64,000 bases of DNA from Entomortierella parvispora E1425 (GCA_020891255.1 BQFW01000011.1:806001-870000), one strand, 5' to 3'. Shown: positions 824 through 33,717, counted from the stretch's first letter. Numbers and translations: made by a program. Notes: generated by a model not told the origin, from the letters alone.

Positions 824-3800
824 ATGGCCGCTCCTCATCCGGCCTTCCTCGCAGAGATGCTGGGTTCTATTCCACAGTAATGGCCTGCCCCATGTTGCGC
901 TATTCCCCACATTCATTCATTCGACCGACTGTCTCACCGACCCATCTTTCTTTACTCTTCTAATGCTAGTGCTCCGGAGAGTCCCCATCCTCAAAGCTTT
1001 GTCGCCGCCAAGGAAACAGCCCGTCTTCTCATCGACATTATTATCCACCCGACACAATGGCGCAGACTTGGCTCTGTGGCCTGGGAATCCGGATTGGACC
1101 TGAAGAGCGCCCTTCGCTCTCCCAGCATTCTCTACCTCCCGAACCCTTTTCACTCACAAGCACTCGCCCACTTGCTCCAACACTTGGATTTCGATCTCGT
1201 CGATGTCGAAACGCTGATCGGCTGTATTGACACTGGAGACTGGACCTGTCTACTCAAAGAGGCTTCTGTTGAGACCATGCACGCCCAACTCAGGACCGAG
1301 GTTGTGCAGACGCTTGAAAACCTCTGCCTGCTCTCGTTCTATCTCCGATCGGGCCTCAGGGCCCTTGCGTCCTCTTCGGGCGGGGCATTGTCTACACTGC
1401 AGGATGCTCAGGAGCAAGCAGACGACCGACTGATCCAGGATCTAGTAGCACGGGTCCTGCAGACTGTAAGAACCAAAGGACGACATGAACAGACGAGATC
1501 TGTTACAATAGACCGATGGCGCGCACCACTGATCGCCCGTCCTTTGTCTCCATTGAGCCGGAGCGAAGCAAACCTTAAATGGCCGACTGACATTTGATGC
1601 ATTCTTTACCTTGTGTCTTTTTGCAGCAGCCCCAGCAGACACAGACACAAACACAGACACCCGTTCCTCTCGGCATCACCAGTACTTGGCGACAGGCTTT
1701 TGCTGAACAGGCCTTGCGACTGAATGCGATCCAGGATTCCCAGAACCCAGCACTGTATGCAGAGACTATATCTATATATGCTCATGTCTACCATCCAGTT
1801 GATGAGACTAACCTCTTCCACCTGCTTGGATCCATCGGACTCAATAGCCCTTCGAAATTGTCGGTTCTTTTGAACGAGGTGCTGGAAATCATTCGACTCG
1901 ATAAGATCCGCAAAGAAGGATGGACAGACCCGTATGAACCTTGACTATTGTGGTTTGCGCAGTTGGATTCTTGGAAACCGAAGGGTTGCACCAAGCTAAC
2001 ATACTTTTCATTCTTTTGATATGCTTAGAAATGCCTCTGATAAATTGACAGATGCACAGTTTCAACAATTGGGACGGATTCTCTCCACTAGCTTTTTCAC
2101 TGTTCTGGAGTATGCTGACAGCAGTCTGCTCATGGTAGGATGGACAACCCCCCAGAAAATGCAATCACAATCTAGAAGTCCCTTTTGCAAGTTTCTTTTT
2201 GCTGACCTTTGACCTTGGACTCTTTATTTCATAGCCCGTTGAGAACGCTGCTCTTCTAAGCCGTTATGCTGCTCAATTGCCTGCTTCCTGGTATTCAGAA
2301 GATTTCCTCCGAGCGACCATCAGGATGGCCAAGACATTTATTCTTACAGAAAAGCGCGACAAGATCCGAGTGCCGCTCCAAGTGGGCGGACTCACTGCAC
2401 TGACTACCCTGTGGTCGTTCTGGATGAGAAAGACGGGATCTGGGGATGCCAACGTCTTGGGACAGGATCTGATTGAGTTGATGGGAGAAATTCTGACCAT
2501 CCCTTCCTTGTTCACTGGCCCCGAGTCCAGAGGATTGCTGGGAGCTTGTTTCTCGGGATTGGCCACTGGATTGGACAAGTGGTCAGGGTTGATGGAGCCA
2601 ACAATCGTGGACGGCCTTGTGGCGGGACTGGAACGTGGACGAGTCTCGGCCCAGGACAGGGACCTGGACAGCATTCAAGCCAGTTTGGCCATGGTACTCA
2701 GATCCGAAATTGTGAACGGTGCAGACGGGCAAAAGGCCGGCGTGGAGAATGACGGCAAGAGCTCCATCTCCAAGCTGGTCACTGCCTTTCTTCAATCCTT
2801 TTACGGAGTCTCGTCTTTGGAGAACCCTGTCGACTTGGCAAGCATTGATGAACTTTTCCAGATCCAGCGACTCTTTCAGTTTGTTGTAACGCAAAGGGCT
2901 GGTTTGACACCCGCAAAGGATGACGAGGATGAAAAGAAGAAAAGGCGGAAGCGCAAGGTCAAAAAGGCGGTCGATCTGAAGAAGCAAGAATGGTTCCAGG
3001 CTTTGGTGCACGGCATTCAGGATGTCACTGCACCGGATGCGCTCCCAGCCCTACTTACAACCACCGGTATTCTGTATGTTGGTTATGTTCTCTTTTCTGC
3101 AAAGGCGACGACTGTTACCCAGTTGAAATTCTCCGCCTACTCTGGTTGTCTAACACTCATTTCTTTTTTTCTCTCTCTTCGGTGTGTGAATCTCTAGTCG
3201 TGCGATCCAACATGCAGAGGACGACCCACCAAAGGTCGATGCCGAAAGTTTGGCTCTTGTGCAGGATATTTTTGTCAGCAGGCTGACAGCCTGCGTGGAG
3301 GTTTTGAAACAGGAAGGCGGGGGAACCTTGTTGCCGGGCCATGCTCAAGCTTGCCTCGTATTTGCAACCAGTCAAACGGTCCCCAACTTGCCTCCATGCA
3401 AAATTGACGCAGAGGAATGTGCACTCTTGGCCAACTTGTTGATCGACTCGATGCTCCAGCCAAACGCAGGAATTGTCCCCGTCAATGAAATCCTGCGCGT
3501 GATCACCTATGAGCTCTCCCGAGAGCGAAACCGACTCAAGATTGACGGAGAGGCGGACAAGTTCTTGACCAAGACTGTGAAAGGGCCGTTGTTTTCAGAG
3601 ATGGGCAGGATCGCTCGCACGGTGGCAACGCTTATGGAAGGCATGGCCAAGGCTGGGGATTGGGACCGCATTCAGTCTTTATTGCAAAGGATGCATTCTT
3701 TTGCCGTCAACATGCACGTGGATTGGGCCCGCTGCGGTCTCTCCAAGGCAGACTCGTTTATAGAGGCCAGGGATGGTGACGAGAGTATATCTGTTGTCAA

Positions 3801-26319: not shown

Positions 26320-27893
26320 ATGGCTTCTCCAGTCCTCCCTAGTGCTCAGGAACGTGCCCCCGCAGGCATGGTCGATTCTTTCAAGGCCGATGCTGCTGAC
26401 AGATGGCACTCCTTCCGCTCAGGGTTCCGCTTGGGTGAGCTCAGTGGATCCCTCGGTGATCTCGGCACTCTCTTGCCCATCATGCTCTCGCTCTCCTTGA
26501 CGGGCCAGGTTGATTTGACGGCCTCTCTTATCTTTGGTGGCATCTGGAACATTGTCACTGGCTTGGCTTTCCGCATGCCCATGTGTGTTCAGCCCATGAA
26601 GTGTAAGTTCTATTTTTTTTTTTTTTTGCTAGTGTAAGTGGTGGTACCTACGTGTGTTGTCTTGGAGTCTATGACACATAATTTAACTCCCGTATCCGCC
26701 TTCTCCTTCCCTATACAAACCATTTAGCCATTGCTGCCATTGCCTTGACCAACCATATGTCCATCGGATCGGTGATGAGTGCCGGTATGGGAGTCTCGGC
26801 CGTCGTCATGTTCCTCGGTATGACTCGCACCATCTACCTCGTTCAAAAGTACACCCCCATGTCCGTCATTCGTGGAATTCAGCTCGGAACTGCCATATCT
26901 TTTGGAGGCAAGGCGGCGGACTTGGTGAAGCAGGCAAAGTCCTTCGGAGGCGAGAACTGGACCTGGGACAACAACTACGAGTGGGCCATCTTTGCTTTCT
27001 TGGTCGTGTTCATCTTCTACTACCGCTCCAAGCGTATCCCAACCGCCATGATCTTGTTCGCCATTGGATTGATCATTGCCTTCATCAAGCTGTACACCAA
27101 CCCCCCGGCCAAGGCCGTCTACCCCAAGATTGGCGTCTATGGCATGCGCGTCACCGTCCCTACCTGGGATGAATTCAAGCATGGATTCGTTTCTGCTTCT
27201 TTGGGTCAGATTCCTTTGACCTGCTTGAACTCGGTCATTGCCCTAGCTGCCTTGGCCAAGGATCTCTTCCCCGAGCGCCCCGCTGGCACGCCCACCATTG
27301 CCGTCTCTGTCGGAATGATGAACTTGGTCGGATGCTTCTTTGGATCGATCCCCTACTGCCACGGATCCGGTGGTTTGGCTGCTCAGTACCGCTTCGGTGC
27401 CAGAACCGAGGTTTCGATCATTGTCTTGGGTCTCCTCAAGATCTTCTTTGGTCTCTTTTTCGGTCCCTCTCTCTCGGGCTTGATTGCCTCTTACCCCAGT
27501 GCCATCTTGGGTGTCATGCTCTTTGTCTCTGGTATCGAGTTGGGTGCCGTGGCCAGAACTGTGAACGATGGTGTGGTCGATGACCAGAAGCGTCACGCCA
27601 ACTTTATCGTCATGATCACCACCGCCGCTATGTTGGTCGGCTTCAAGAACGACGGTATTGGTTTCTTGGGTGGACTCGCTGCCGCCCTTTGCTTCTACAT
27701 TGGAGCCAAGTACATGGGACGCATGGACGATGATGTCCAGGCCATGTCGGAGCAGCAACACCAGGAGACTGCTCTTTCCTCGGTCGACAGCGAGCTCCAC
27801 GACCGCTCTTCTCTTCACAAGGTGCCCGTTCACGAGACTGCCGAGATCTCTGTCGACGGCGCCAACAACAACACTGTTCGTCGCTCGGACTAA
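26320..27893 (+). CDS. Molybdate transporter MOT1 family membrane protein, 2 exons
   Basis: ELSGSLGDLGTLLP, PMCVQPMK, GQIPLTCLNSV, CHGSGGLAAQYRFGAR motifs. Intron at about 26602-26727. Confidence 0.9.
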
Positions 27894-28128: not shown

Positions 28129-31100
28129 TCACTGTGAATCGCGCTGTTGAGTAGAAGGTAACGAGGTGTGAGATCGAGTTACGGAGGATTGCGTTTGTGG
28201 GCTAGAGGGAGTCTCGAGAACGTCGAGGTAGGAAGGTAATCCAGCTTCATGTGAGCTGCTCGCATCTGAAGTATGGCTAGGGCGAAGATAGTCAGAGTTC
28301 TAAAAGGAAAAAGAAAAAAAAGGGCATTAGATGATGGTCATGTCCGTACTGAACACAAAATGTTGCTTTCTTTGCTTTCTTACCAGCACTTGGTTCATGG
28401 TGGCTCGGCGATGTGGGTCAGGGTTGAGGAGGATGCGGATCAAACTCCTTGCATTCGCATCCGGAACGGCCGCTTCAAAATGAGGAATTTCCAGTTCGCG
28501 AGCAGACGTCCATTTAAGTCCATTGGCCAACGAAGGTGTATCTGCTGAGGGATGGGCCAAGAAATGCAATACCGTATCATCTGAGAGCGACAAGGGGAAC
28601 AAGGGTCGTGTCGCGAAAAGTTCCTATGAATTGCCAATGAAAACGATGATTAATTTTTTTTTCCATGCCTATTACGCCCACTTGATGATATGAAACAGGG
28701 GGTTTTGGAAATTCACTTACATAGACGAGACAACCAAACGCCCAAAGATCAATGCTGAAATTGGCTGTCACTCCTGAGGAAGCCTCCTTGTCGACTGTTG
28801 TTCCTCTCGCCACCTCGGGCGGGCAGTATCGGACAGTTCCGATACCGATACATTCTTCGTTTGCGACTCGAGACGACTCCAGATCAATGAGCTTCCATTG
28901 TTGGCGAGGATCATCCCGGTTGTGCATCACATTCGAGGGCTTGAGGTCACAATAGACAATCCTCTTGGAATGACACCATGTCAGACAACGAAGCACGCCC
29001 TTGATAATATCCTTGATATAGCCCTCATCCAGCGCGGGTCCTGAGCGATAAAGTCCAGCGCCTGCAAGATCCAAGGGGGGTTCATTCGCCTTGCTCTGTT
29101 CACGCAGAGCTACCTTCTTTGCCTTTCGTGCATTCTTCAACATTTGCGCCAACGTTTCATCCAGACGCTCCAGAATCGTCAAACGAATCTTGGCCGGCTT
29201 GTTGGGATCATCCGTTTCAGACAACACCAGAGTCGCGACATGTTTCAACTCTACAATGCAGGGTCCACGCAGTCGCCTCAAGACCCGACATTCTCGCTCC
29301 CAGGCCTCCTTTCGAGAAAACGACTTGATCACAATCGGTTGCTGTGTATCCGAGTCGATTGCAAACAGGATATCGTTGGCCTCCCCATGAATCGGGCAAG
29401 GCGACTTGGTCAGTTTGTAACGCGCGGGCAGATTCTGAACAAGAGTCACCAAAGCAGGGTGATCTAGGTTGGTATACGTCGTCGAAGATTTGGTGGTGGA
29501 GGTCGAGGTCGTGTCCTTTCGCCTCAAGTCTGTCACCTGGCCTTCGCCGTCGGTCAAATCTGCTGAATCCTTTTGATTAAAATGTTCCAGTTGTTCCTTA
29601 GATCGCTTGTGTAATTGAATGGATCCACTGCTACGATGGCTCAACACCATTCCCTCGTCTTCGCTTGCTCGGCCCATATCCATGCCGGTGCACATCAGAG
29701 TGACCCTGTCGAGAGGACTCACAGAGTTGAACAAGGTCGTATCACGAGGACTAGTGGGACTGTCTCGATTCAACACCTCGGATGAGTTGGCTCCTGTAAG
29801 TGAAATAGATCCAGGCCCAATAGATGATCCTTTTCCAGAAAGAATGGAAATGCCACTGTGATCCCGCCTCGTGCCTCTGGACGGTGGATGGATCATCATG
29901 GGCATCCTTTGAGAGCTGGCTCCTCCTAGACTTCCTGTCGAGTGTCCCAGGGACCGTTGTGTTCCTGAGGTTCCTGGTGCGCCATGGACACGCGTGGGTA
30001 TATAGCGTAACGTGGGCAAGCTCTGATTGTTCTCTCGCTGGTCAAAGGACAAAGACGAGGCAAACGTCCAGCGATCTGCATCCTCCTCGTCGTCTTCTGC
30101 CATGTATGCTGGATAATAGGGGTCGGAGGAAATCGAGCCGACGCGTGCTGCTGCAGTCCCAGGTGTAGACGAATCGGCCTCCTTTTGTGAAGACCCATAT
30201 GTCAGTGAACCACCAAAGACGTTCGATGACCGACTTGAATCACCTGCACTCAACTCTTGCTCTGTACTCGGCTGTGTCAATGCCGCAATAGACTGCATTG
30301 GGTATCCCTGTGCTGGAATGGACCTCCGCACCGCCCTCTGTGATCGTTTTCCAAAGGATGATGCCGAGTCTCTGTCGGCGCTGCTGTAGTTGCTGGGTTT
30401 GTCCTCGGCGACCATATCTTGTGAAAGAGGTTGTTCTCCGTCATTCAAATGACTGTCCGTTCCTTGCGAGTCCTTTGACATGCCTCTCGCTCTTTTGGCT
30501 GATCTGCGACGGAAGAACAAGAAACAGATAAAGGCTGCAATAAGTGCCAAACTGGCACAGATTACTCCTATGGTTAACGGTAGATTCGTGTTACTCGATC
30601 CCGTTCCTCCAGGTAATGAAGGCGCAGGAACTCCTGTGGCTGGTTCACCCAGCTTGGAAGAGGTCCATTGCCATGCCAACGTGTCGAGGATGTAAATGTT
30701 GGTGTCATTCGCTTGTGGTGCGCCATAGCCTCCCCACACAAGCATGTTGGTTCCGTTCAAAAGAGCAGAATGCCCGGTACGAGGCCCAGGCCCCATTATT
30801 TTGTTGGTTGTCATCCTGTTCCAGACCCATTGAGGCTGTGATGCGTCCATCACCCAAACATCATCATCTATCGGCGCATCTGGTCCGCCTCCTAGTTTGT
30901 GTGGTTTACGGATGAGAAAAAAAATCGTTAGAAGAGTTGGAAGTGTGACAGGCGGTGCACATACCATGTGTGTTCTGTGTAACCTATGATCAAAGGAGGG
31001 GCGCAAGGCAGAAAAATCCAGGGATCAGAGGGCGGGAAATGTCAGGGGGGCAGGAGGATTTACCATAGACAATCATAGTGTTGTTCAGGCAGACGGCAGT

Positions 31101-32844
31101 GTGGCCCTTTCTGGCCGACGGTACCGACCCGCCGACACCGGGGTTGACAGGGATGGCGAGTGTCCACGTCTCCAAAGTTAAATCAAAGGTGTGCACGGTG
31201 TTGTAAGCCGGACTGTTTTGATCGCTCCCGCCAAAGATGGCCATGGTGTTGAGGCCCGTGAGTCTGCACATGGTGTGGTACATTAGTGACGGTCCATTGG
31301 CGATCGAGGTCCAACTAAAAGTGCTTTCATCCTAAAAAACATGATAGAAAAAACTGCGTCAATAGATCGCCCTGTTGACATGAGGAAGATGGGGGCTCAA
31401 AAGCACAAAAGAAAGACCATCAGCCGCATAGAAGGCAAACTTGGAAGGATACAGCTCTCAAAAATAGAAATTGGGTTGCGATACACAAAACAGTACGCGA
31501 AAAATGAACAGATGAACATGAACTGGACAAACACAACTGGAGGTGCAGCAGCAACAACAACAACAACAATGACCCATTCCTGACAGTCGACTGCAACGCC
31601 CATGTCTCTCTTTGCTGGCTGGCCTGCCATTTCACTCTGCGCGTGCTCAAGTTGGAGTAGAGGGCGTTGACGGGCGGGATTATATATAGCACACCCAGCA
31701 GGCAACCAGTGGGAAGAAGCTGCAGGCTACAAACAAGGAGCATACCACTTCGACCGACACCGACATGATCATGAACTCGCCCTCTCCCGCTTGCAGTGCC
31801 GTTCAACTTACTAGCTTTGTGAGGTCATTGAGGACTCCTGAGCTGGCAAACCCATTTGAACCTACAGAGGCACCGCCGTGAACAAAGATCAAGCCATCTG
31901 ATACACCCACAGCGGCCCCCAGGCGCAAAGGAGGAGCAACAGCAGGTACAGCTAATAGAGGTCGGGGGTGCATGTAACAAGGATAAAGGCGTTACTGTCT
32001 GTGTCGAAGGTCTTTTTACCCAAAGTCAAGAATCATTGGCGCGTCATCAGCACCGAAACTTACGTGGATTTGGCGTGGACCAGACCCAAAAGTACGTGTC
32101 TAACATTAGCAACTCGGTGGCAGGACTCGAGGTATTGCTGATCAATGATAGTATCTTGCCCTGAGATGGTAAGGAGATAGATCTGAGGAACTTTTGTGGC
32201 AGTGGTGCAGTGGAGGCCGTTCCAGGAAAAGTGGTTGGCGGTTGCGACCATTGCCGCAGAGTCGTGCTCCAGACCCATAGATCGTTCGATCCAAGAACAG
32301 TAGCCCCGTAGGGGTCCTCATTCGCATCAGTGGTGCCACCGAACACGACCATGGAAGTGTCCACAATTGCGGCTCCGTGAAAGGCGCGCCAGGTGGGTGA
32401 AACGGCATCGACAGCAGCCAGGCCAGATGTAAGTGAGGAGAGGAGAGAGAGCCAAGGGAGGCGGCGGCGATGTGGTAGAGGCGTTGATGGTGTGGGTGGA
32501 AGGAGAAACAAGAAAATGCTCCAGAGCACTAAAGCCGGGGTTCTCGCCCTTGTCTTTCGTTTGCAACTTCTCCTACACCCTCCCTTGCAACGCCGATCAT
32601 CATTGAAATCACTGTGGATAGCTCTTTGTGTCGGCACTGTCCAACTAGTGCATCGGCCTATTGTGGAGGGCTGTGTCGGGGGGCTGCTGCACGATACTAG
32701 GCTGTTTGTCGGTAAGGGCGAGTCCAGGTGGAGGGATCCAACTAGATCACGTCTGAGGTCCCTGACATGGTGTTGACAGACGCCCGGGATGTTCTTCCTC
32801 GAACAGCATACATGAGAATAGTTCATGCTGGCAGGGTCCCGCAT
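28129..32844 (-). CDS. Receptor-like protein: N-terminal hydrophobic segment, Kelch repeats, single TM helix, cytoplasmic Ser/Thr kinase
   Basis: Kelch blades (RAFHGAAIVDTSMVVFGG, LIFVHGG, MAIFGG, ARKGHTAVCLNNTMIVYG, PRTGHSALLNGTNMLVWGG); TM IGVICASLALIAAFICFLFF followed by RRRSAKR; kinase IVIK, ERE, YCDLKPSN, DLE, GTVRYCPPE, DLWAFG. The last Kelch blades, TM and most of the kinase lie in one exon. Start codon uncertain. Confidence 0.8.
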
Positions 32845-33717
32845 GCAAGCAGGGTCAAAGAAGGGTAAATGACAAAGCAGAGCAGAGCGTGCGCGGTGAG
32901 AAGGAGAAAGGAAAGAATGGGGAAGAGAGAGGGGAAAAGAGAGAATGCTCTGGTAGGAGTTGTCAATGCATGCAGAAGGACTGAGCGATGGGGGTAAGGA
33001 GCAGTGTCAAAAAGACCAAAACAGTATGTGAATGTGAAAAAAGGGTGACAGGGAAAGAAAGGAAAGATGCGACAGCGAGATCAGTCCCATGTCGCCTTTG
33101 TCCATGGAACAAACAGTGAGGTGCGGCACGGACTCTTTGCTGTGGAAGCCCCTCTTTCCCAGCCTGCCCTGCCTATCTGCCTGTCTGTCTTGCGGTGAAT
33201 TGCACCATGAACATTGTCAAAAATTATAAATAGCCACAAGGCCTTTTGTTGTACGGATGCTTGACCATTCAGGCACACAAAGGTTCGGTGCATCCCGCTG
33301 GGCGCACACGTTTGCGAAATATGTATGCCCGGTCGACCCTCAACCCGCTTGGCGTCGGCACAAGGCATGTCATGCACGGTGCCTGGATGCTTGAAAGATA
33401 GCAGCTTCACCACTTGTGATCTCGCGTCGACCAGGAACGCGTCAGAAATATGCCAAGAAGCCGTTAGAACTGCGATTGCAATTTTCCAGAAACAAAGTGT
33501 TGGAACCGCTATGTCTTATCTGCCGGACACAGAGTGGATCCATACCTTGAAATAGCACAGTGTCGAGGTGTTGACACAAGACCAACACTGAGCCGGTTCA
33601 ACACCAGGGACCTCCCTTACACGCGGCGCTGGCGCCTACGTAAATGGTCACGTGAAATATTGGTTCATTTGAGTTCATTTGGTGCAAGTCTGAAAACAGC
33701 TCTTTTATTCAGGCTAT

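What the first reader, a model, noticed from the sequence alone, without database searches (positions are those of the whole stretch)
28129..32844. Receptor-like kinase architecture in a fungus: Kelch ectodomain, single TM, non-RD Ser/Thr kinase
Seen: hydrophobic N-terminal segment, at least 5 Kelch blades with several N-x-S/T sequons, one TM (about 30512-30575) with a basic stop-transfer RRRSAKR, a long Ser-rich juxtamembrane linker, then a kinase. The kinase keeps the beta-3 Lys, alpha-C Glu and catalytic D-x-K-x-x-N, but has YCD for HRD, DLE for DFG and a degenerate Gly loop. Kelch, TM and kinase share one uninterrupted exon, so the fusion is not a gene-model artefact. Known: model fungi lack plasma-membrane receptor kinases, and non-RD kinases are enriched among plant and animal pattern-recognition receptors. 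Inference: a surface receptor, possibly sensing carbohydrate or microbial ligands.
Basis: partly seen in the sequence, partly recalled or inferred. Interest (0 to 1): 0.76.

Follow-up and report, generated by a model that had tools for sequence, protein, structure and literature searches.

The report
Kelch-ectodomain receptor-like kinase of early fungi
This Entomortierella gene encodes a membrane protein with a six-bladed Kelch propeller predicted to face outside and an unusual CDK/MAPK-like kinase inside; it belongs to an undescribed receptor-like kinase family found in early-diverging fungi, including mucormycosis agents, and not seen in yeasts or moulds.

Summary
The minus-strand gene at 28129-32844 is Entomortierella parvispora EMPS_07986. 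It has six exons. One 2.17-kb exon carries the last Kelch blades, the only strong TM helix, a 356-aa Ser-rich linker and kinase subdomains I-IX, so the fusion is real.

- **Ectodomain:** models as a six-bladed Kelch propeller. One N-glycosylation sequon is conserved in 30 of 30 relatives. Orthologues have N-terminal signal peptides, and RRRSAKR follows the TM. Kelch outside and kinase inside is therefore well supported.
- **Kinase:** folds confidently and is nearest to CDK/MAPK (about 21% identity), not to plant RLK/Pelle or tyrosine kinases. It keeps the beta-3 Lys, alpha-C Glu, D-x-K-x-x-N and the metal-binding Asp. It is non-RD, has DLE for DFG, and has a one-Gly loop.
- **Distribution:** single copy in this genome. 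The family is present throughout Mortierellaceae, Mucorales (Rhizopus, Mucor, Lichtheimia), Umbelopsis and Endogonales. Distant Kelch-TM-kinase relatives occur in Glomeromycotina, Zoopagomycota and chytrids. None was seen in Dikarya.
- **Literature:** no paper describing the family was found.
- **Unresolved:** the start codon, expression, localisation, catalytic activity and ligand. The carbohydrate or microbial-ligand idea is untested.

The parts
28129..32844 (-). Whole coding span as read from ATG 32844 (1256 codons plus stop at 28129-28131). Six exons: 32844-32064, 31951-31812, 31331-31064, 30891-28721, 28623-28384, 28299-28129.
   Evidence: Residues 165-1256 are identical to deposited EMPS_07986.
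32536..32844 (-). Possible N-terminal extension (residues 1-103). It is poorly conserved and Cys/Arg/Ser/Pro-rich, and its coding status is unresolved. ATG 32844 sits in a short island (CATGYGGGACCCTG) shared with Gryganskiella.
32500..32535 (-). First hydrophobic segment, ALVLWSIFLFLL. It is homologous to the MMAFWSILLLLL start of the Gryganskiella orthologue, but lacks the ATG here.
32404..32460 (-). Signal-peptide-like segment: RRR, then LPWLSLLSSLTSGLAAV, then V-D-A. It fits the -3/-1 rule and ends directly before the conserved start of the propeller (SPTWRAFHG). It aligns with the signal peptides of M. alpina and Mucorales orthologues.
   Evidence: The cleavage-site reading is my inference.
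30653..32403 (-). Six-bladed Kelch beta-propeller ectodomain, interrupted by introns 31952-32063, 31332-31811 and 30892-31063. Sequons start at 32136, 31085, 30757 and 30709. It has only two Cys, both invariant.
   Evidence: Pfam. AF2 model pLDDT 83, pTM 0.84. Foldseek matches to KLHDC3, KLHL12, LZTR1 and Keap1. Conservation.
30584..30652 (-). Short Pro/Gly/Ser stalk between the propeller and the membrane.
   Evidence: Model pLDDT is below 50 at 314-322.
30512..30583 (-). Single transmembrane helix, LPLTIGVICASLALIAAFICFLFF.
   Evidence: Hydropathy 2.8 over 19 residues. Conserved in position in all full-length relatives.
30485..30511 (-). Basic stop-transfer, RRRSAKRAR (positive-inside).
29444..30484 (-). 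Cytosolic juxtamembrane linker, about 356 aa and 17.7% Ser. Three islands are conserved between Mortierellales and Mucorales: EDADRWTFASSLSFD (30041-30085), LPTLRYIPTR (29990-30019) and LFNSVSPLDRV (29702-29734).
28288..29443 (-). Protein kinase domain, with introns at 28624-28720 and 28300-28383. Motifs: beta-3 Lys in IVIKSF (29318-29335), alpha-C EAWERECR (29285-29308), catalytic loop VYCDLKPSN (28931-28957), KLIDLESSR (28868-28894), RYCPPEV (28811-28831), DLWAFGC (28730-28750).
   Evidence: Pfam. PDB sequence hits ERK2 and CDK12. AF2 pLDDT 92.4. Foldseek CDK2, CDK12, Pho85, ERK2. Invariant residues.
28129..28287 (-). Ser/Thr/Gln-rich C-terminal tail and stop codon. There is no KKXX or KDEL-type retrieval motif.

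Best explanation
The gene encodes a type-I single-pass membrane protein that works as a receptor-like Ser/Thr kinase.

**Proposed architecture and mechanism**
- A six-bladed, N-glycosylated Kelch propeller faces the secretory lumen or the cell exterior.
- One helix crosses the membrane.
- A long, disordered, Ser-rich cytosolic linker carries three conserved short motifs.
- The linker leads to a divergent, CDK/MAPK-like, non-RD protein kinase that is most likely catalytically competent.
- Binding of an unknown ligand to the propeller would change the receptor's oligomeric state or conformation. The kinase would then phosphorylate the linker, its own or a partner's, and downstream substrates.

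**Evolutionary setting:** it is the single E. parvispora member of an old, undescribed family. The family is present in Mortierellomycota and Mucoromycota, with distant Kelch-TM-kinase relatives in Glomeromycotina, Zoopagomycota and Chytridiomycota, and is apparently lost in Dikarya.

**Shown here:** the architecture, the folds, the conservation and the distribution.

**Inferred:** topology, catalytic activity, plasma-membrane location, ligand dependence and the signalling mechanism.
For: **One gene**
- A single exon (30891-28721) holds a Kelch blade, the TM and Pkinase.
- The exon junctions match deposited EMPS_07986.

**Propeller**
- The AF2 model has pLDDT 83 and pTM 0.84.
- Its best matches are six-bladed Kelch domains, E 1e-16 to 1e-13.

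**Topology**
- Orthologues P0008 and P0066-P0068 begin with classic signal peptides directly before the conserved PxW(R/K)AxH start of the propeller.
- Gryganskiella has an in-frame MMAFWSILLLLL at the homologous site.
- Sequon N73 is kept in 30 of 30 ectodomains, N278 in 25 of 30 and N226 in 22 of 30. The only two ectodomain Cys are invariant.
- RRRSAKR follows the TM.

**Kinase**
- Pfam Pkinase scores 66 bits. The AF2 model has pLDDT 92.4 and pTM 0.91.
- Nearest structures are CDK2-cyclin, CDK12, Pho85 and ERK2.
- The beta-3 Lys, the alpha-C Arg-Glu, D-L-K-P-x-N, the metal-binding Asp, the PPE Glu and the subdomain IX and XI residues are invariant or nearly so across 47 sequences, from chytrids to Mortierella.
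- The same residues have decayed in the Neoconidiobolus copy and one metagenomic copy. This argues that they are kept elsewhere for catalysis.

**Family**
- A profile search of 1.84 billion representatives gives about 27 core clusters at E below 1e-70. Every full-length member reads Kelch-TM-linker-kinase.
- Source names place the core in Mucorales, Umbelopsis, Jimgerdemannia and Mortierellaceae, and the distant relatives in Paraglomus, Ambispora, Thamnocephalis, Neoconidiobolus and five chytrids. Pfam confirms Kelch plus Pkinase in these distant relatives.
- The gene is single copy in its own genome.
Against: - No transcript data were available: no RNA run was listed. Expression, the 5' end and isoforms are therefore unverified.
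- In this species there is no in-frame ATG between 32826 and the Kelch domain. The signal-like segment would sit about 100-130 residues into the protein, or the true start is something I could not identify.
- No dedicated signal-peptide or topology predictor was available. I used hydropathy and homology only.
- The phosphate-binding loop has a single Gly and an elongated loop, and DFG is DLE. Either change could impair ATP binding or regulation.
- Similarity to CMGC kinases is weak (about 21% identity, E about 1e-12), so group assignment is tentative.
- Nothing identifies the ligand or shows plasma-membrane rather than endomembrane residence.
- Absence from Dikarya rests on named hits and a sample of 30 cluster names, not on an exhaustive taxonomic census.
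Confidence: 0.6

Rival explanations
1. Same protein and topology, but the kinase domain is a pseudokinase. The receptor would signal as a scaffold or allosteric activator of a partner kinase, without phosphotransfer of its own.
For: - The Gly-rich loop is reduced to one Gly inside a longer loop. DFG is DLE or DFE in every member, and HRD is YCD or FCD.
- Two distant members have clearly lost the beta-3 Lys and the catalytic-loop Asn, so the fold can persist without catalysis.
- Non-catalytic signalling by non-RD receptor kinases is documented in plants (abstract of PMC11259431, listed).
Against: - The beta-3 Lys, alpha-C Glu, catalytic Asp, Lys and Asn, and the metal-binding Asp are invariant or nearly so across 47 sequences from several fungal phyla.
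- Tyr in place of the HRD His is also found in active kinases such as PKA (my knowledge).
- The kinase is the most conserved part of the protein: 84-94% identity to close orthologues, against 76-84% for the ectodomain.
Confidence: 0.2
2. A lumenal sensor of the secretory or endomembrane system (ER, Golgi, vacuole) in the manner of IRE1 or PERK, rather than a plasma-membrane receptor for external ligands.
For: - The only widespread transmembrane Ser/Thr kinase known in fungi is ER-resident IRE1 (PMC10463195).
- Sequence alone cannot separate lumenal from extracellular exposure.
Against: - There is no RNase/KEN domain or any other Pfam domain beyond Kelch and Pkinase.
- There is no C-terminal KKXX-type retrieval motif.
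- The kinase is not IRE1-like in PDB searches.
- A short Pro/Ser stalk and conserved sequons are typical of surface proteins (inference).
Confidence: 0.13
3. Reversed or non-receptor topology: translation starts at the deposited Met (32352) or otherwise without a functional signal. The Kelch propeller would then be cytosolic, as in Kel1/Tea1-type proteins, and the hydrophobic helix a membrane anchor.
For: - The deposited models for this species and for Gryganskiella start at MVVFGG with no signal peptide.
- No ATG lies directly before the signal-like segment in this genome.
Against: - The 17 residues upstream of that Met (SPTWRAFHGAAIVDTS) are in frame and conserved to Mucorales, so they are coding.
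- Orthologues with complete models have N-terminal signal peptides.
- A sequon is conserved in 30 of 30 relatives.
- With the Kelch domain cytosolic, the basic cluster and the kinase would lie on the lumenal side, against the positive-inside rule and away from ATP.
Confidence: 0.05
4. Gene-model or assembly artefact: two neighbouring genes (a Kelch protein and a kinase) wrongly joined.
For: Several database entries of the family are split or truncated, giving Kelch-only and kinase-only fragments.
Against: - The last Kelch blade, the TM, the linker and the kinase lie in one uninterrupted 723-codon exon.
- The same order is found in more than 100 proteins from independent assemblies.
Confidence: 0.02

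Closest known systems
Plant receptor-like kinases (RLK/Pelle family), especially non-RD pattern-recognition receptors such as FLS2, EFR and XA21
   Same: Type-I layout: signal peptide, repeat-built ectodomain, one TM, juxtamembrane segment, Ser/Thr kinase. The catalytic loop is non-RD.
   Different: The kinase is not of the RLK/Pelle/IRAK (TKL) lineage. Its best sequence and structure matches are CDK and MAPK. The ectodomain is a Kelch propeller, not LRR, LysM or lectin. The linker is far longer, about 356 aa. The resemblance is convergent.
Kelch-repeat receptor-like kinases reported in green algae (Chlorophyta survey, PMC12757656)
   Same: A Kelch-repeat ectodomain combined with a TM and a kinase. 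That survey annotates 4 of 36 structurally analysed algal RLKs with Kelch repeats.
   Different: Those were collected as plant-type RLKs. The fungal kinase is CDK/MAPK-like with DxE in place of DFG. No direct comparison was made here.
CMGC kinases (CDK2, CDK12/13, Pho85, ERK2)
   Same: They are the best PDB matches by sequence (E about 1e-12) and by fold (Foldseek E about 1e-16, TM about 0.66). Shared features are DLKPSN, an xxRYxxPE P+1 segment, and an insert between helices G and H that aligns with the MAPK insert.
   Different: Identity is only about 21%. There is no PSTAIRE or TxY. The kinase is non-RD, has DLE for DFG and a one-Gly phosphate loop, and is tethered to a membrane receptor. 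No cyclin or MAPK-cascade context is known. Database names such as 'Cyclin-dependent kinase 12/13' for family members are automatic and misleading.
Fungal IRE1 (and PERK-type) transmembrane kinases
   Same: Type-I membrane Ser/Thr kinases with a lumenal sensor domain. IRE1 is the main transmembrane kinase family reported in fungi (PMC10463195).
   Different: There is no RNase domain, the kinase lineage differs, and the lumenal domain is a Kelch propeller.
Extracellular or other Kelch propellers (attractin/MEGF8, LZTR1, KLHDC2/3, KLHL12, Keap1)
   Same: Six-bladed Kelch fold. Pfam hits to Beta-prop_ATRN-LZTR1 and Kelch_KLHDC2_KLHL20_DRC7.
   Different: Identity is about 15-22%. Apart from attractin these are cytosolic peptide-binding adaptors, and none is fused to a kinase.
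Fungal cell-wall integrity sensors (Wsc1-3, Mid2)
   Same: Type-I surface sensors of fungi with a Ser/Thr/Pro stalk and a cytosolic tail that recruits signalling proteins (my knowledge).
   Different: Those have no kinase domain and no propeller. No sequence relation was tested or seen.

Membership tests
Eukaryotic protein kinase superfamily (Pfam PF00069) | Profile match above the curated threshold and a bilobal fold | tested here: met
   Pkinase scores 66.2 bits against a cut-off of 31.7 on exon D alone. The AF2 model has pLDDT 92.4 and its top Foldseek hits are kinases.
Eukaryotic protein kinase superfamily (Pfam PF00069) | Catalytic residues: beta-3 Lys, alpha-C Glu, catalytic-loop D-x-K-x-x-N, metal-binding Asp, APE Glu | tested here: met
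   IVIK, RE in EAWERECR, CDLKPSN, IDLE and PPE are present. They are invariant or at least 90% conserved in 47 sequences.
Eukaryotic protein kinase superfamily (Pfam PF00069) | Gly-rich loop GxGxxG | tested here: not met
   Only one Gly (PIHGEAN). The family consensus is xGxxNxILF.
Non-RD kinases | No Arg immediately before the catalytic Asp | tested here: met
   YCD here, FCD in Mucorales, and HCD, HAD, HLD or HTD in chytrids and Glomeromycotina.
Plant RLK/Pelle (IRAK, TKL group) receptor kinases | Kinase domain belonging to the RLK/Pelle/IRAK lineage | tested here: not met
   The top 60 PDB sequence hits are ERK2 and CDK12. The top 50 structural hits are CDK, Pho85 and ERK. No formal kinome tree was built.
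Receptor tyrosine kinases | Tyr-kinase catalytic loop (HRDLAARN-type) and a P+1 loop of the PxxWxAPE type | tested here: not met
   The catalytic loop is the Ser/Thr-type DLKPSN. The Pfam PK_Tyr_Ser-Thr model did not reach E 1 on the window's exon. The UniRef name 'receptor protein-tyrosine kinase' on the Absidia member is automatic.
CMGC group | Closest similarity to CDK/MAPK/GSK/CLK, plus a CMGC insert and the CMGC P+1 arginine | tested here: inconclusive
   Best hits are CMGC, and the G-H insert aligns with the MAPK insert. Identity is only about 21%, and no group-level phylogeny was done.
Kelch beta-propeller | Repeated Kelch motifs folding into a six-bladed (or seven-bladed) propeller | tested here: met
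   Pfam Kelch families are found in four exons. The AF2 model matches six-bladed Kelch domains at TM about 0.7.
Type-I receptor topology (signal peptide, ectodomain out, kinase in) | Cleavable N-terminal signal peptide | tested here: inconclusive
   Clear in orthologues. In this genome the signal-like segment (32404-32460) has no adjacent ATG. No SignalP-type tool was available.
Type-I receptor topology (signal peptide, ectodomain out, kinase in) | Single TM with positive-inside on the kinase side; glycosylation sites on the ectodomain | tested here: met
   One strong hydrophobic helix plus RRRSAKRAR. Sequon N73 is conserved in 30 of 30 relatives. Actual glycosylation is not testable here.
IRE1-type ER stress sensors | C-terminal KEN/RNase domain after the kinase | tested here: not met
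   No such Pfam hit. The C-terminal 56 aa are low-complexity.

The most novel reading that the evidence does not exclude
Early-diverging fungi retain an ancient cell-surface receptor kinase system, here called Kelch-RLKs. It would have been built independently of animal RTKs and plant RLKs by fusing a CDK/MAPK-like, non-RD kinase to an extracellular Kelch propeller. It would date to before the chytrid-zygomycete split and was lost in the ancestor of Dikarya. That would be a separate invention of receptor Ser/Thr kinase signalling, active today in Mortierella, AM-fungal relatives and mucormycosis agents.
Probability: 0.4. Interest if true: 0.82.

Novelty: new variant of a known kind. Interest (0 to 1): 0.7.

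Why it matters
Textbook fungal signalling is built on Dikarya and relies on GPCRs, histidine kinases and wall-stress sensors. A cross-kingdom survey counted only 54 transmembrane kinases in 18 fungi, mostly IRE1 and histidine kinases (PMC10463195).

A conserved Kelch-TM-kinase family across chytrids, zygomycete lineages and Mortierella would show that single-pass receptor kinases are part of the ancestral fungal toolkit and were later lost. It would also be a case of a receptor built on a CMGC-like kinase.

The family is single or low copy and easy to target genetically. It is present in tractable species (Mucor lusitanicus, Phycomyces, Mortierella alpina) and in pathogens (Rhizopus, Lichtheimia, Apophysomyces, Cunninghamella). 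That makes it a plausible handle on how these fungi sense their surroundings, hosts or endobacteria.

Tried and rejected
- **Transcript evidence:** The look-up of sequencing runs listed no RNA run for the locus, so read laying could not be used. A Logan 'protein' (P0021) that looked intron-free proved to be an ORF read through introns on a genomic contig.
- **Start codon:**
  - I compared the 5' region with Gryganskiella and Haplosporangium. The ATG-ATG that opens the hydrophobic segment in Gryganskiella is replaced by GCT-TTA-GTG here.
  - A hypothetical 50-nt intron joining an upstream ATGATG (about 32603) to the hydrophobic segment keeps the frame. It has an atypical GTGTAG donor, unlike the five GTAAGT-type introns of the gene, so I do not adopt it.
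  - The E. beljakovae locus gave no recognisable first exon.
- **Second paralogue:** Mortierellaceae have two clades, but the own genome has only this locus. The weak kinase hit on contig 12 is a soluble, unrelated kinase.
- **Kelch-only relatives in Dikarya:** the one basidiomycete hit (Naganishia) has no signal peptide or TM and is a cytosolic Kelch protein.
- **RNA hidden in the long intron 2:** no Rfam match and no sequence conservation.
- **Literature:** eight searches found no description of the family or of locus tags RO3G_05567, PHYBLDRAFT_150050 or EMPS_07986. Subscription journals are not covered.
- **Joined model:** Exons were searched by reference, and the deposited protein P0001 stood in for the spliced product. 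Exons were concatenated only inside one script to map coordinates.

Full report
**What is in the sequence**

The feature is a minus-strand gene. Six-frame translation and inspection of splice sites give these exons:
- an exon ending at 32064 (start uncertain)
- 31951-31812
- 31331-31064
- 30891-28721
- 28623-28384
- 28299-28129

All five introns have GTAAGT-like donors and TAG acceptors. Residues 165-1256 are identical to the deposited protein EMPS_07986 of Entomortierella parvispora (P0001, 1092 aa). The window is therefore from that mortierellalean fungus.

Pfam run exon by exon finds Kelch families in the first four exons. It finds Pkinase (E 3.9e-18, 66 bits against a cut-off of 31.7) in the fourth exon, which also holds a Kelch blade and the only strong hydrophobic helix.

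The 809-codon open frame 28577-31006 proves that Kelch, TM and kinase are contiguous in the DNA. The helix is at 30512-30583 and is followed by RRRSAKRAR. A 356-residue linker with 17.7% Ser follows, then the kinase.

**Ectodomain**

An AlphaFold2 model built on 30 relatives has mean pLDDT 83 and pTM 0.84. It matches six-bladed Kelch propellers (KLHDC3, KLHL12, LZTR1, Keap1) at Foldseek E 1e-16 to 1e-13 and TM about 0.7. The propeller therefore has six blades.

In the 30-sequence alignment, the sequon at P0001 residue 73 is present in all 30 sequences, including Mucorales. Two more sequons are kept in 22 and 25 of 30. The only two Cys of the ectodomain are invariant. A short Pro/Gly/Ser stalk links the propeller to the membrane.

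**Topology and the N-terminus**

Orthologues with complete models start with classic signal peptides that end directly before the conserved PxW(R/K)AxH opening of the propeller. Examples are M. alpina P0008 and the Absidia, Chlamydoabsidia and Lichtheimia proteins P0066-P0068.

In E. parvispora the homologous stretch reads RRR, then LPWLSLLSSLTSGLAAV, then V-D-A (32404-32460). It has the shape of a signal peptide, but no ATG precedes it. A second hydrophobic stretch, ALVLWSIFLFLL (32500-32535), is homologous to MMAFWSILLLLL of Gryganskiella, where two ATGs open it. Here those codons read GCT-TTA-GTG.

The only in-frame ATGs are at 32844 and 32826. The first lies in a short island that is conserved with Gryganskiella and is in frame there too. 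The deposited start at 32352 cuts off 17 conserved, in-frame residues of blade 1 and is almost certainly too short.

My reading is that the Kelch domain is extracytosolic and the kinase cytosolic. This rests on the orthologues' signal peptides, the invariant sequon and the positive-inside rule. The true start codon in this species is unresolved.

No RNA run was listed, so I could not test it.

**Kinase**

Against PDB sequences, the best matches are ERK2 and CDK12, at E about 1e-12 and mostly over the C-lobe.

A model built on 47 family members has pLDDT 92.4 and pTM 0.91. Its best structural matches are CDK2-cyclin, CDK12, Pho85 and ERK2, at about 21% identity. The stretch between helices G and H aligns with the MAPK insert. 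No RLK/Pelle/IRAK kinase or tyrosine kinase is among the top hits. The similarity to plant and animal receptor kinases is therefore one of architecture, not descent.

Across the 47 sequences the following are invariant or at least 90% conserved:
- the beta-3 Lys
- the Arg-Glu of helix C
- the catalytic Asp, Lys and Asn
- the metal-binding Asp
- the Glu that replaces the DFG Gly
- the PPE Glu
- the subdomain IX Asp-x-Trp-x-x-Gly
- the subdomain XI Arg

The family signature is a non-RD catalytic loop (H/Y/F, then C/A/L/T, then D) plus D-(F/L)-E-(S/A)-x-R.

Two distant copies have lost the beta-3 Lys and the catalytic-loop Asn: Neoconidiobolus P0160 and the metagenomic P0151. That decay where constraint is relaxed suggests the residues are kept elsewhere for catalysis. 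I put the odds of an active kinase at about 0.6. The one-Gly loop and DLE are the main doubts.

**Family and distribution**

*Core family.* The first word-based search returned 68 proteins. About 60 were from Mortierellaceae at 52-80% identity. Weaker hits came from Mucorales and Jimgerdemannia, all with Kelch plus Pkinase.

A profile of the kinase domain was searched with HMMER against 1.84 billion representatives. It found 47 clusters at E up to 1e-30, with a sharp drop after about 27 core clusters at E below 1e-70. Every full-length core member reads Kelch (about 340 aa), TM, linker, kinase.

Names recovered for core members:
- Cunninghamella, Phycomyces, Mycotypha, Apophysomyces, Pilobolus, Radiomyces, Sporodiniella, Dichotomocladium and Umbelopsis
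- Rhizopus delemar (RO3G_05567), R. microsporus, R. stolonifer, Mucor lusitanicus, Lichtheimia corymbifera, Phycomyces blakesleeanus (PHYBLDRAFT_150050), Syncephalastrum and others

*Distant relatives.* The next tier, at E 1e-49 to 1e-31, is Thamnocephalis, Neoconidiobolus, Paraglomus, Ambispora and the chytrids Phlyctochytrium, Irineochytrium, Dinochytrium, Zopfochytrium and Chytridiales sp. JEL 0842. Pfam confirms Kelch plus Pkinase in the nine that I scanned, and hydropathy shows a TM between the two domains.

*Limits of the family.* Beyond that tier, the hits I could name are generic kinases of algae and protists. No Dikarya protein appeared among the named hits. A basidiomycete Kelch hit is cytosolic and has no kinase.

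*Paralogues.* A FastTree of 78 kinase domains places P0001 with Gryganskiella in one of two mortierellacean paralogue clades, with Mucoromycotina as the sister group. The own genome holds only this copy.

**Most likely mechanism**

*Shown:* a conserved single-pass protein with a six-bladed Kelch propeller on one side of the membrane, and a long linker plus a divergent kinase with intact catalytic residues on the other.

*Inferred:*
- The propeller is extracellular and glycosylated and binds an unknown ligand.
- Binding alters oligomeric state or conformation.
- The kinase phosphorylates the Ser-rich linker and downstream proteins. Three linker motifs conserved from Mortierella to Mucorales may be the relevant sites: EDADRWTFASSLSF, LRYIP and SVSPLDR.

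The nearest structural relatives of the propeller bind peptides, and extracellular Kelch propellers of other kinds bind sugars, so neither ligand class is favoured by the data.

*Rivals:*
- a pseudokinase scaffold (0.2)
- an endomembrane lumenal sensor (0.13)
- a reversed topology (0.05)
- an annotation artefact (0.02)

**Comparison with what is known**

- It works like a receptor-like kinase, but it is not a member of the RLK/Pelle or RTK families.
- It is not IRE1, because it has no RNase domain.
- Its kinase is nearest to CMGC kinases, but group membership is not established.
- Kelch-repeat ectodomains on RLKs have been noted in a structure-based survey of green algae (PMC12757656).
- A cross-kingdom survey reports very few transmembrane kinases in fungi, mainly IRE1 and histidine kinases (PMC10463195).
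- Eight full-text searches found no description of this fungal family or of its locus tags.
- Database names are automatic and misleading: 'F-box only protein 42', 'Cyclin-dependent kinase 12/13', 'Negative regulator of mitotic exit' and 'receptor protein-tyrosine kinase'.

**Surroundings**

- Downstream, and convergent with this gene, lies a MOT1-type molybdate transporter at 26745-27893 on the plus strand.
- ORFs upstream have no Pfam match.
- In two relatives the gene is flanked by an IF-2B family gene and a WD40 gene.
- Nothing suggests an operon-like functional link.
- The earlier notes of this scan near the locus concern a Ty3/Gypsy element and a MULE-like element further along the window, and do not bear on this gene.

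**Verdict**

The gene is a member of an apparently undescribed, ancient family of Kelch-ectodomain receptor-like kinases of early-diverging fungi: a new variant of a known kind.

Exons were searched by reference, and the deposited protein stood in for the spliced product.

Noticed in passing
window 32832-32846 (minus strand); L001 about 3393-3407: A short island, CATG(C/T)GGGACCCTG, around the in-frame ATG at 32844 is conserved with Gryganskiella cystojenkinii, while the flanks are not. In both species that ATG is in frame with the Kelch ORF over 140-185 codons. It could be the true start, a uORF or a regulatory element.
   Followed up: partly
window 31332-31811 (minus strand); L011 about 1160-1660: Intron 2 is unusually long for this gene (480 nt) and carries a (GTT)n/(GCT)n microsatellite near 31545-31575. 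An intron of similar length sits at the same position in a Linnemannia-like contig. There is no sequence conservation and no Rfam match.
   Followed up: yes
window 26745-27893 (+): The convergent downstream neighbour encodes a MOT1-type molybdate transporter of the MFS/sulfate-permease kind (Pfam PF16983, E 4e-37).
   Followed up: partly
own genome G000; tree: Mortierellaceae carry two paralogue clades of this receptor kinase, with M. alpina, Lobosporangium, Linnemannia zychae and E. lignicola represented in both. E. parvispora has only the clade-A copy.
   Followed up: partly
P0160 (Neoconidiobolus thromboides), P0151 (metagenome): These distant family members keep the signal peptide, Kelch propeller, TM and kinase fold. 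They have lost the beta-3 Lys and the catalytic-loop Asn, so they are likely pseudokinase derivatives of the family.
   Followed up: partly
P0134, P0137, P0127, P0135 (37 hits, taxon unknown): Giant predicted proteins (1400-2400 aa) contain four or five partial matches to this kinase profile, interleaved with hydrophobic helices. They look like tandem arrays of TM-kinase genes fused by gene callers. Their organisms were not identified.
   Followed up: no
L004 = G000:C12:1204076-1207450: The only other own-genome match to the kinase (36% identity over 120 aa) lies in a 1033-aa ORF with Pkinase and no hydrophobic helix. It is a soluble, unrelated kinase.
   Followed up: yes
database entries: Family members are deposited as 'F-box only protein 42', 'Cyclin-dependent kinase 12/13', 'Negative regulator of mitotic exit' or 'receptor protein-tyrosine kinase'. 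Many models are truncated at the N-terminus or split into Kelch-only and kinase-only halves.
   Followed up: partly
P0079 (Dictyostelium dimigraforme), P0097 (Mucor velutinosus): Kelch propeller plus a single TM, without a kinase, also exists. These are possible kinase-less relatives or independent Kelch-TM proteins.
   Followed up: no
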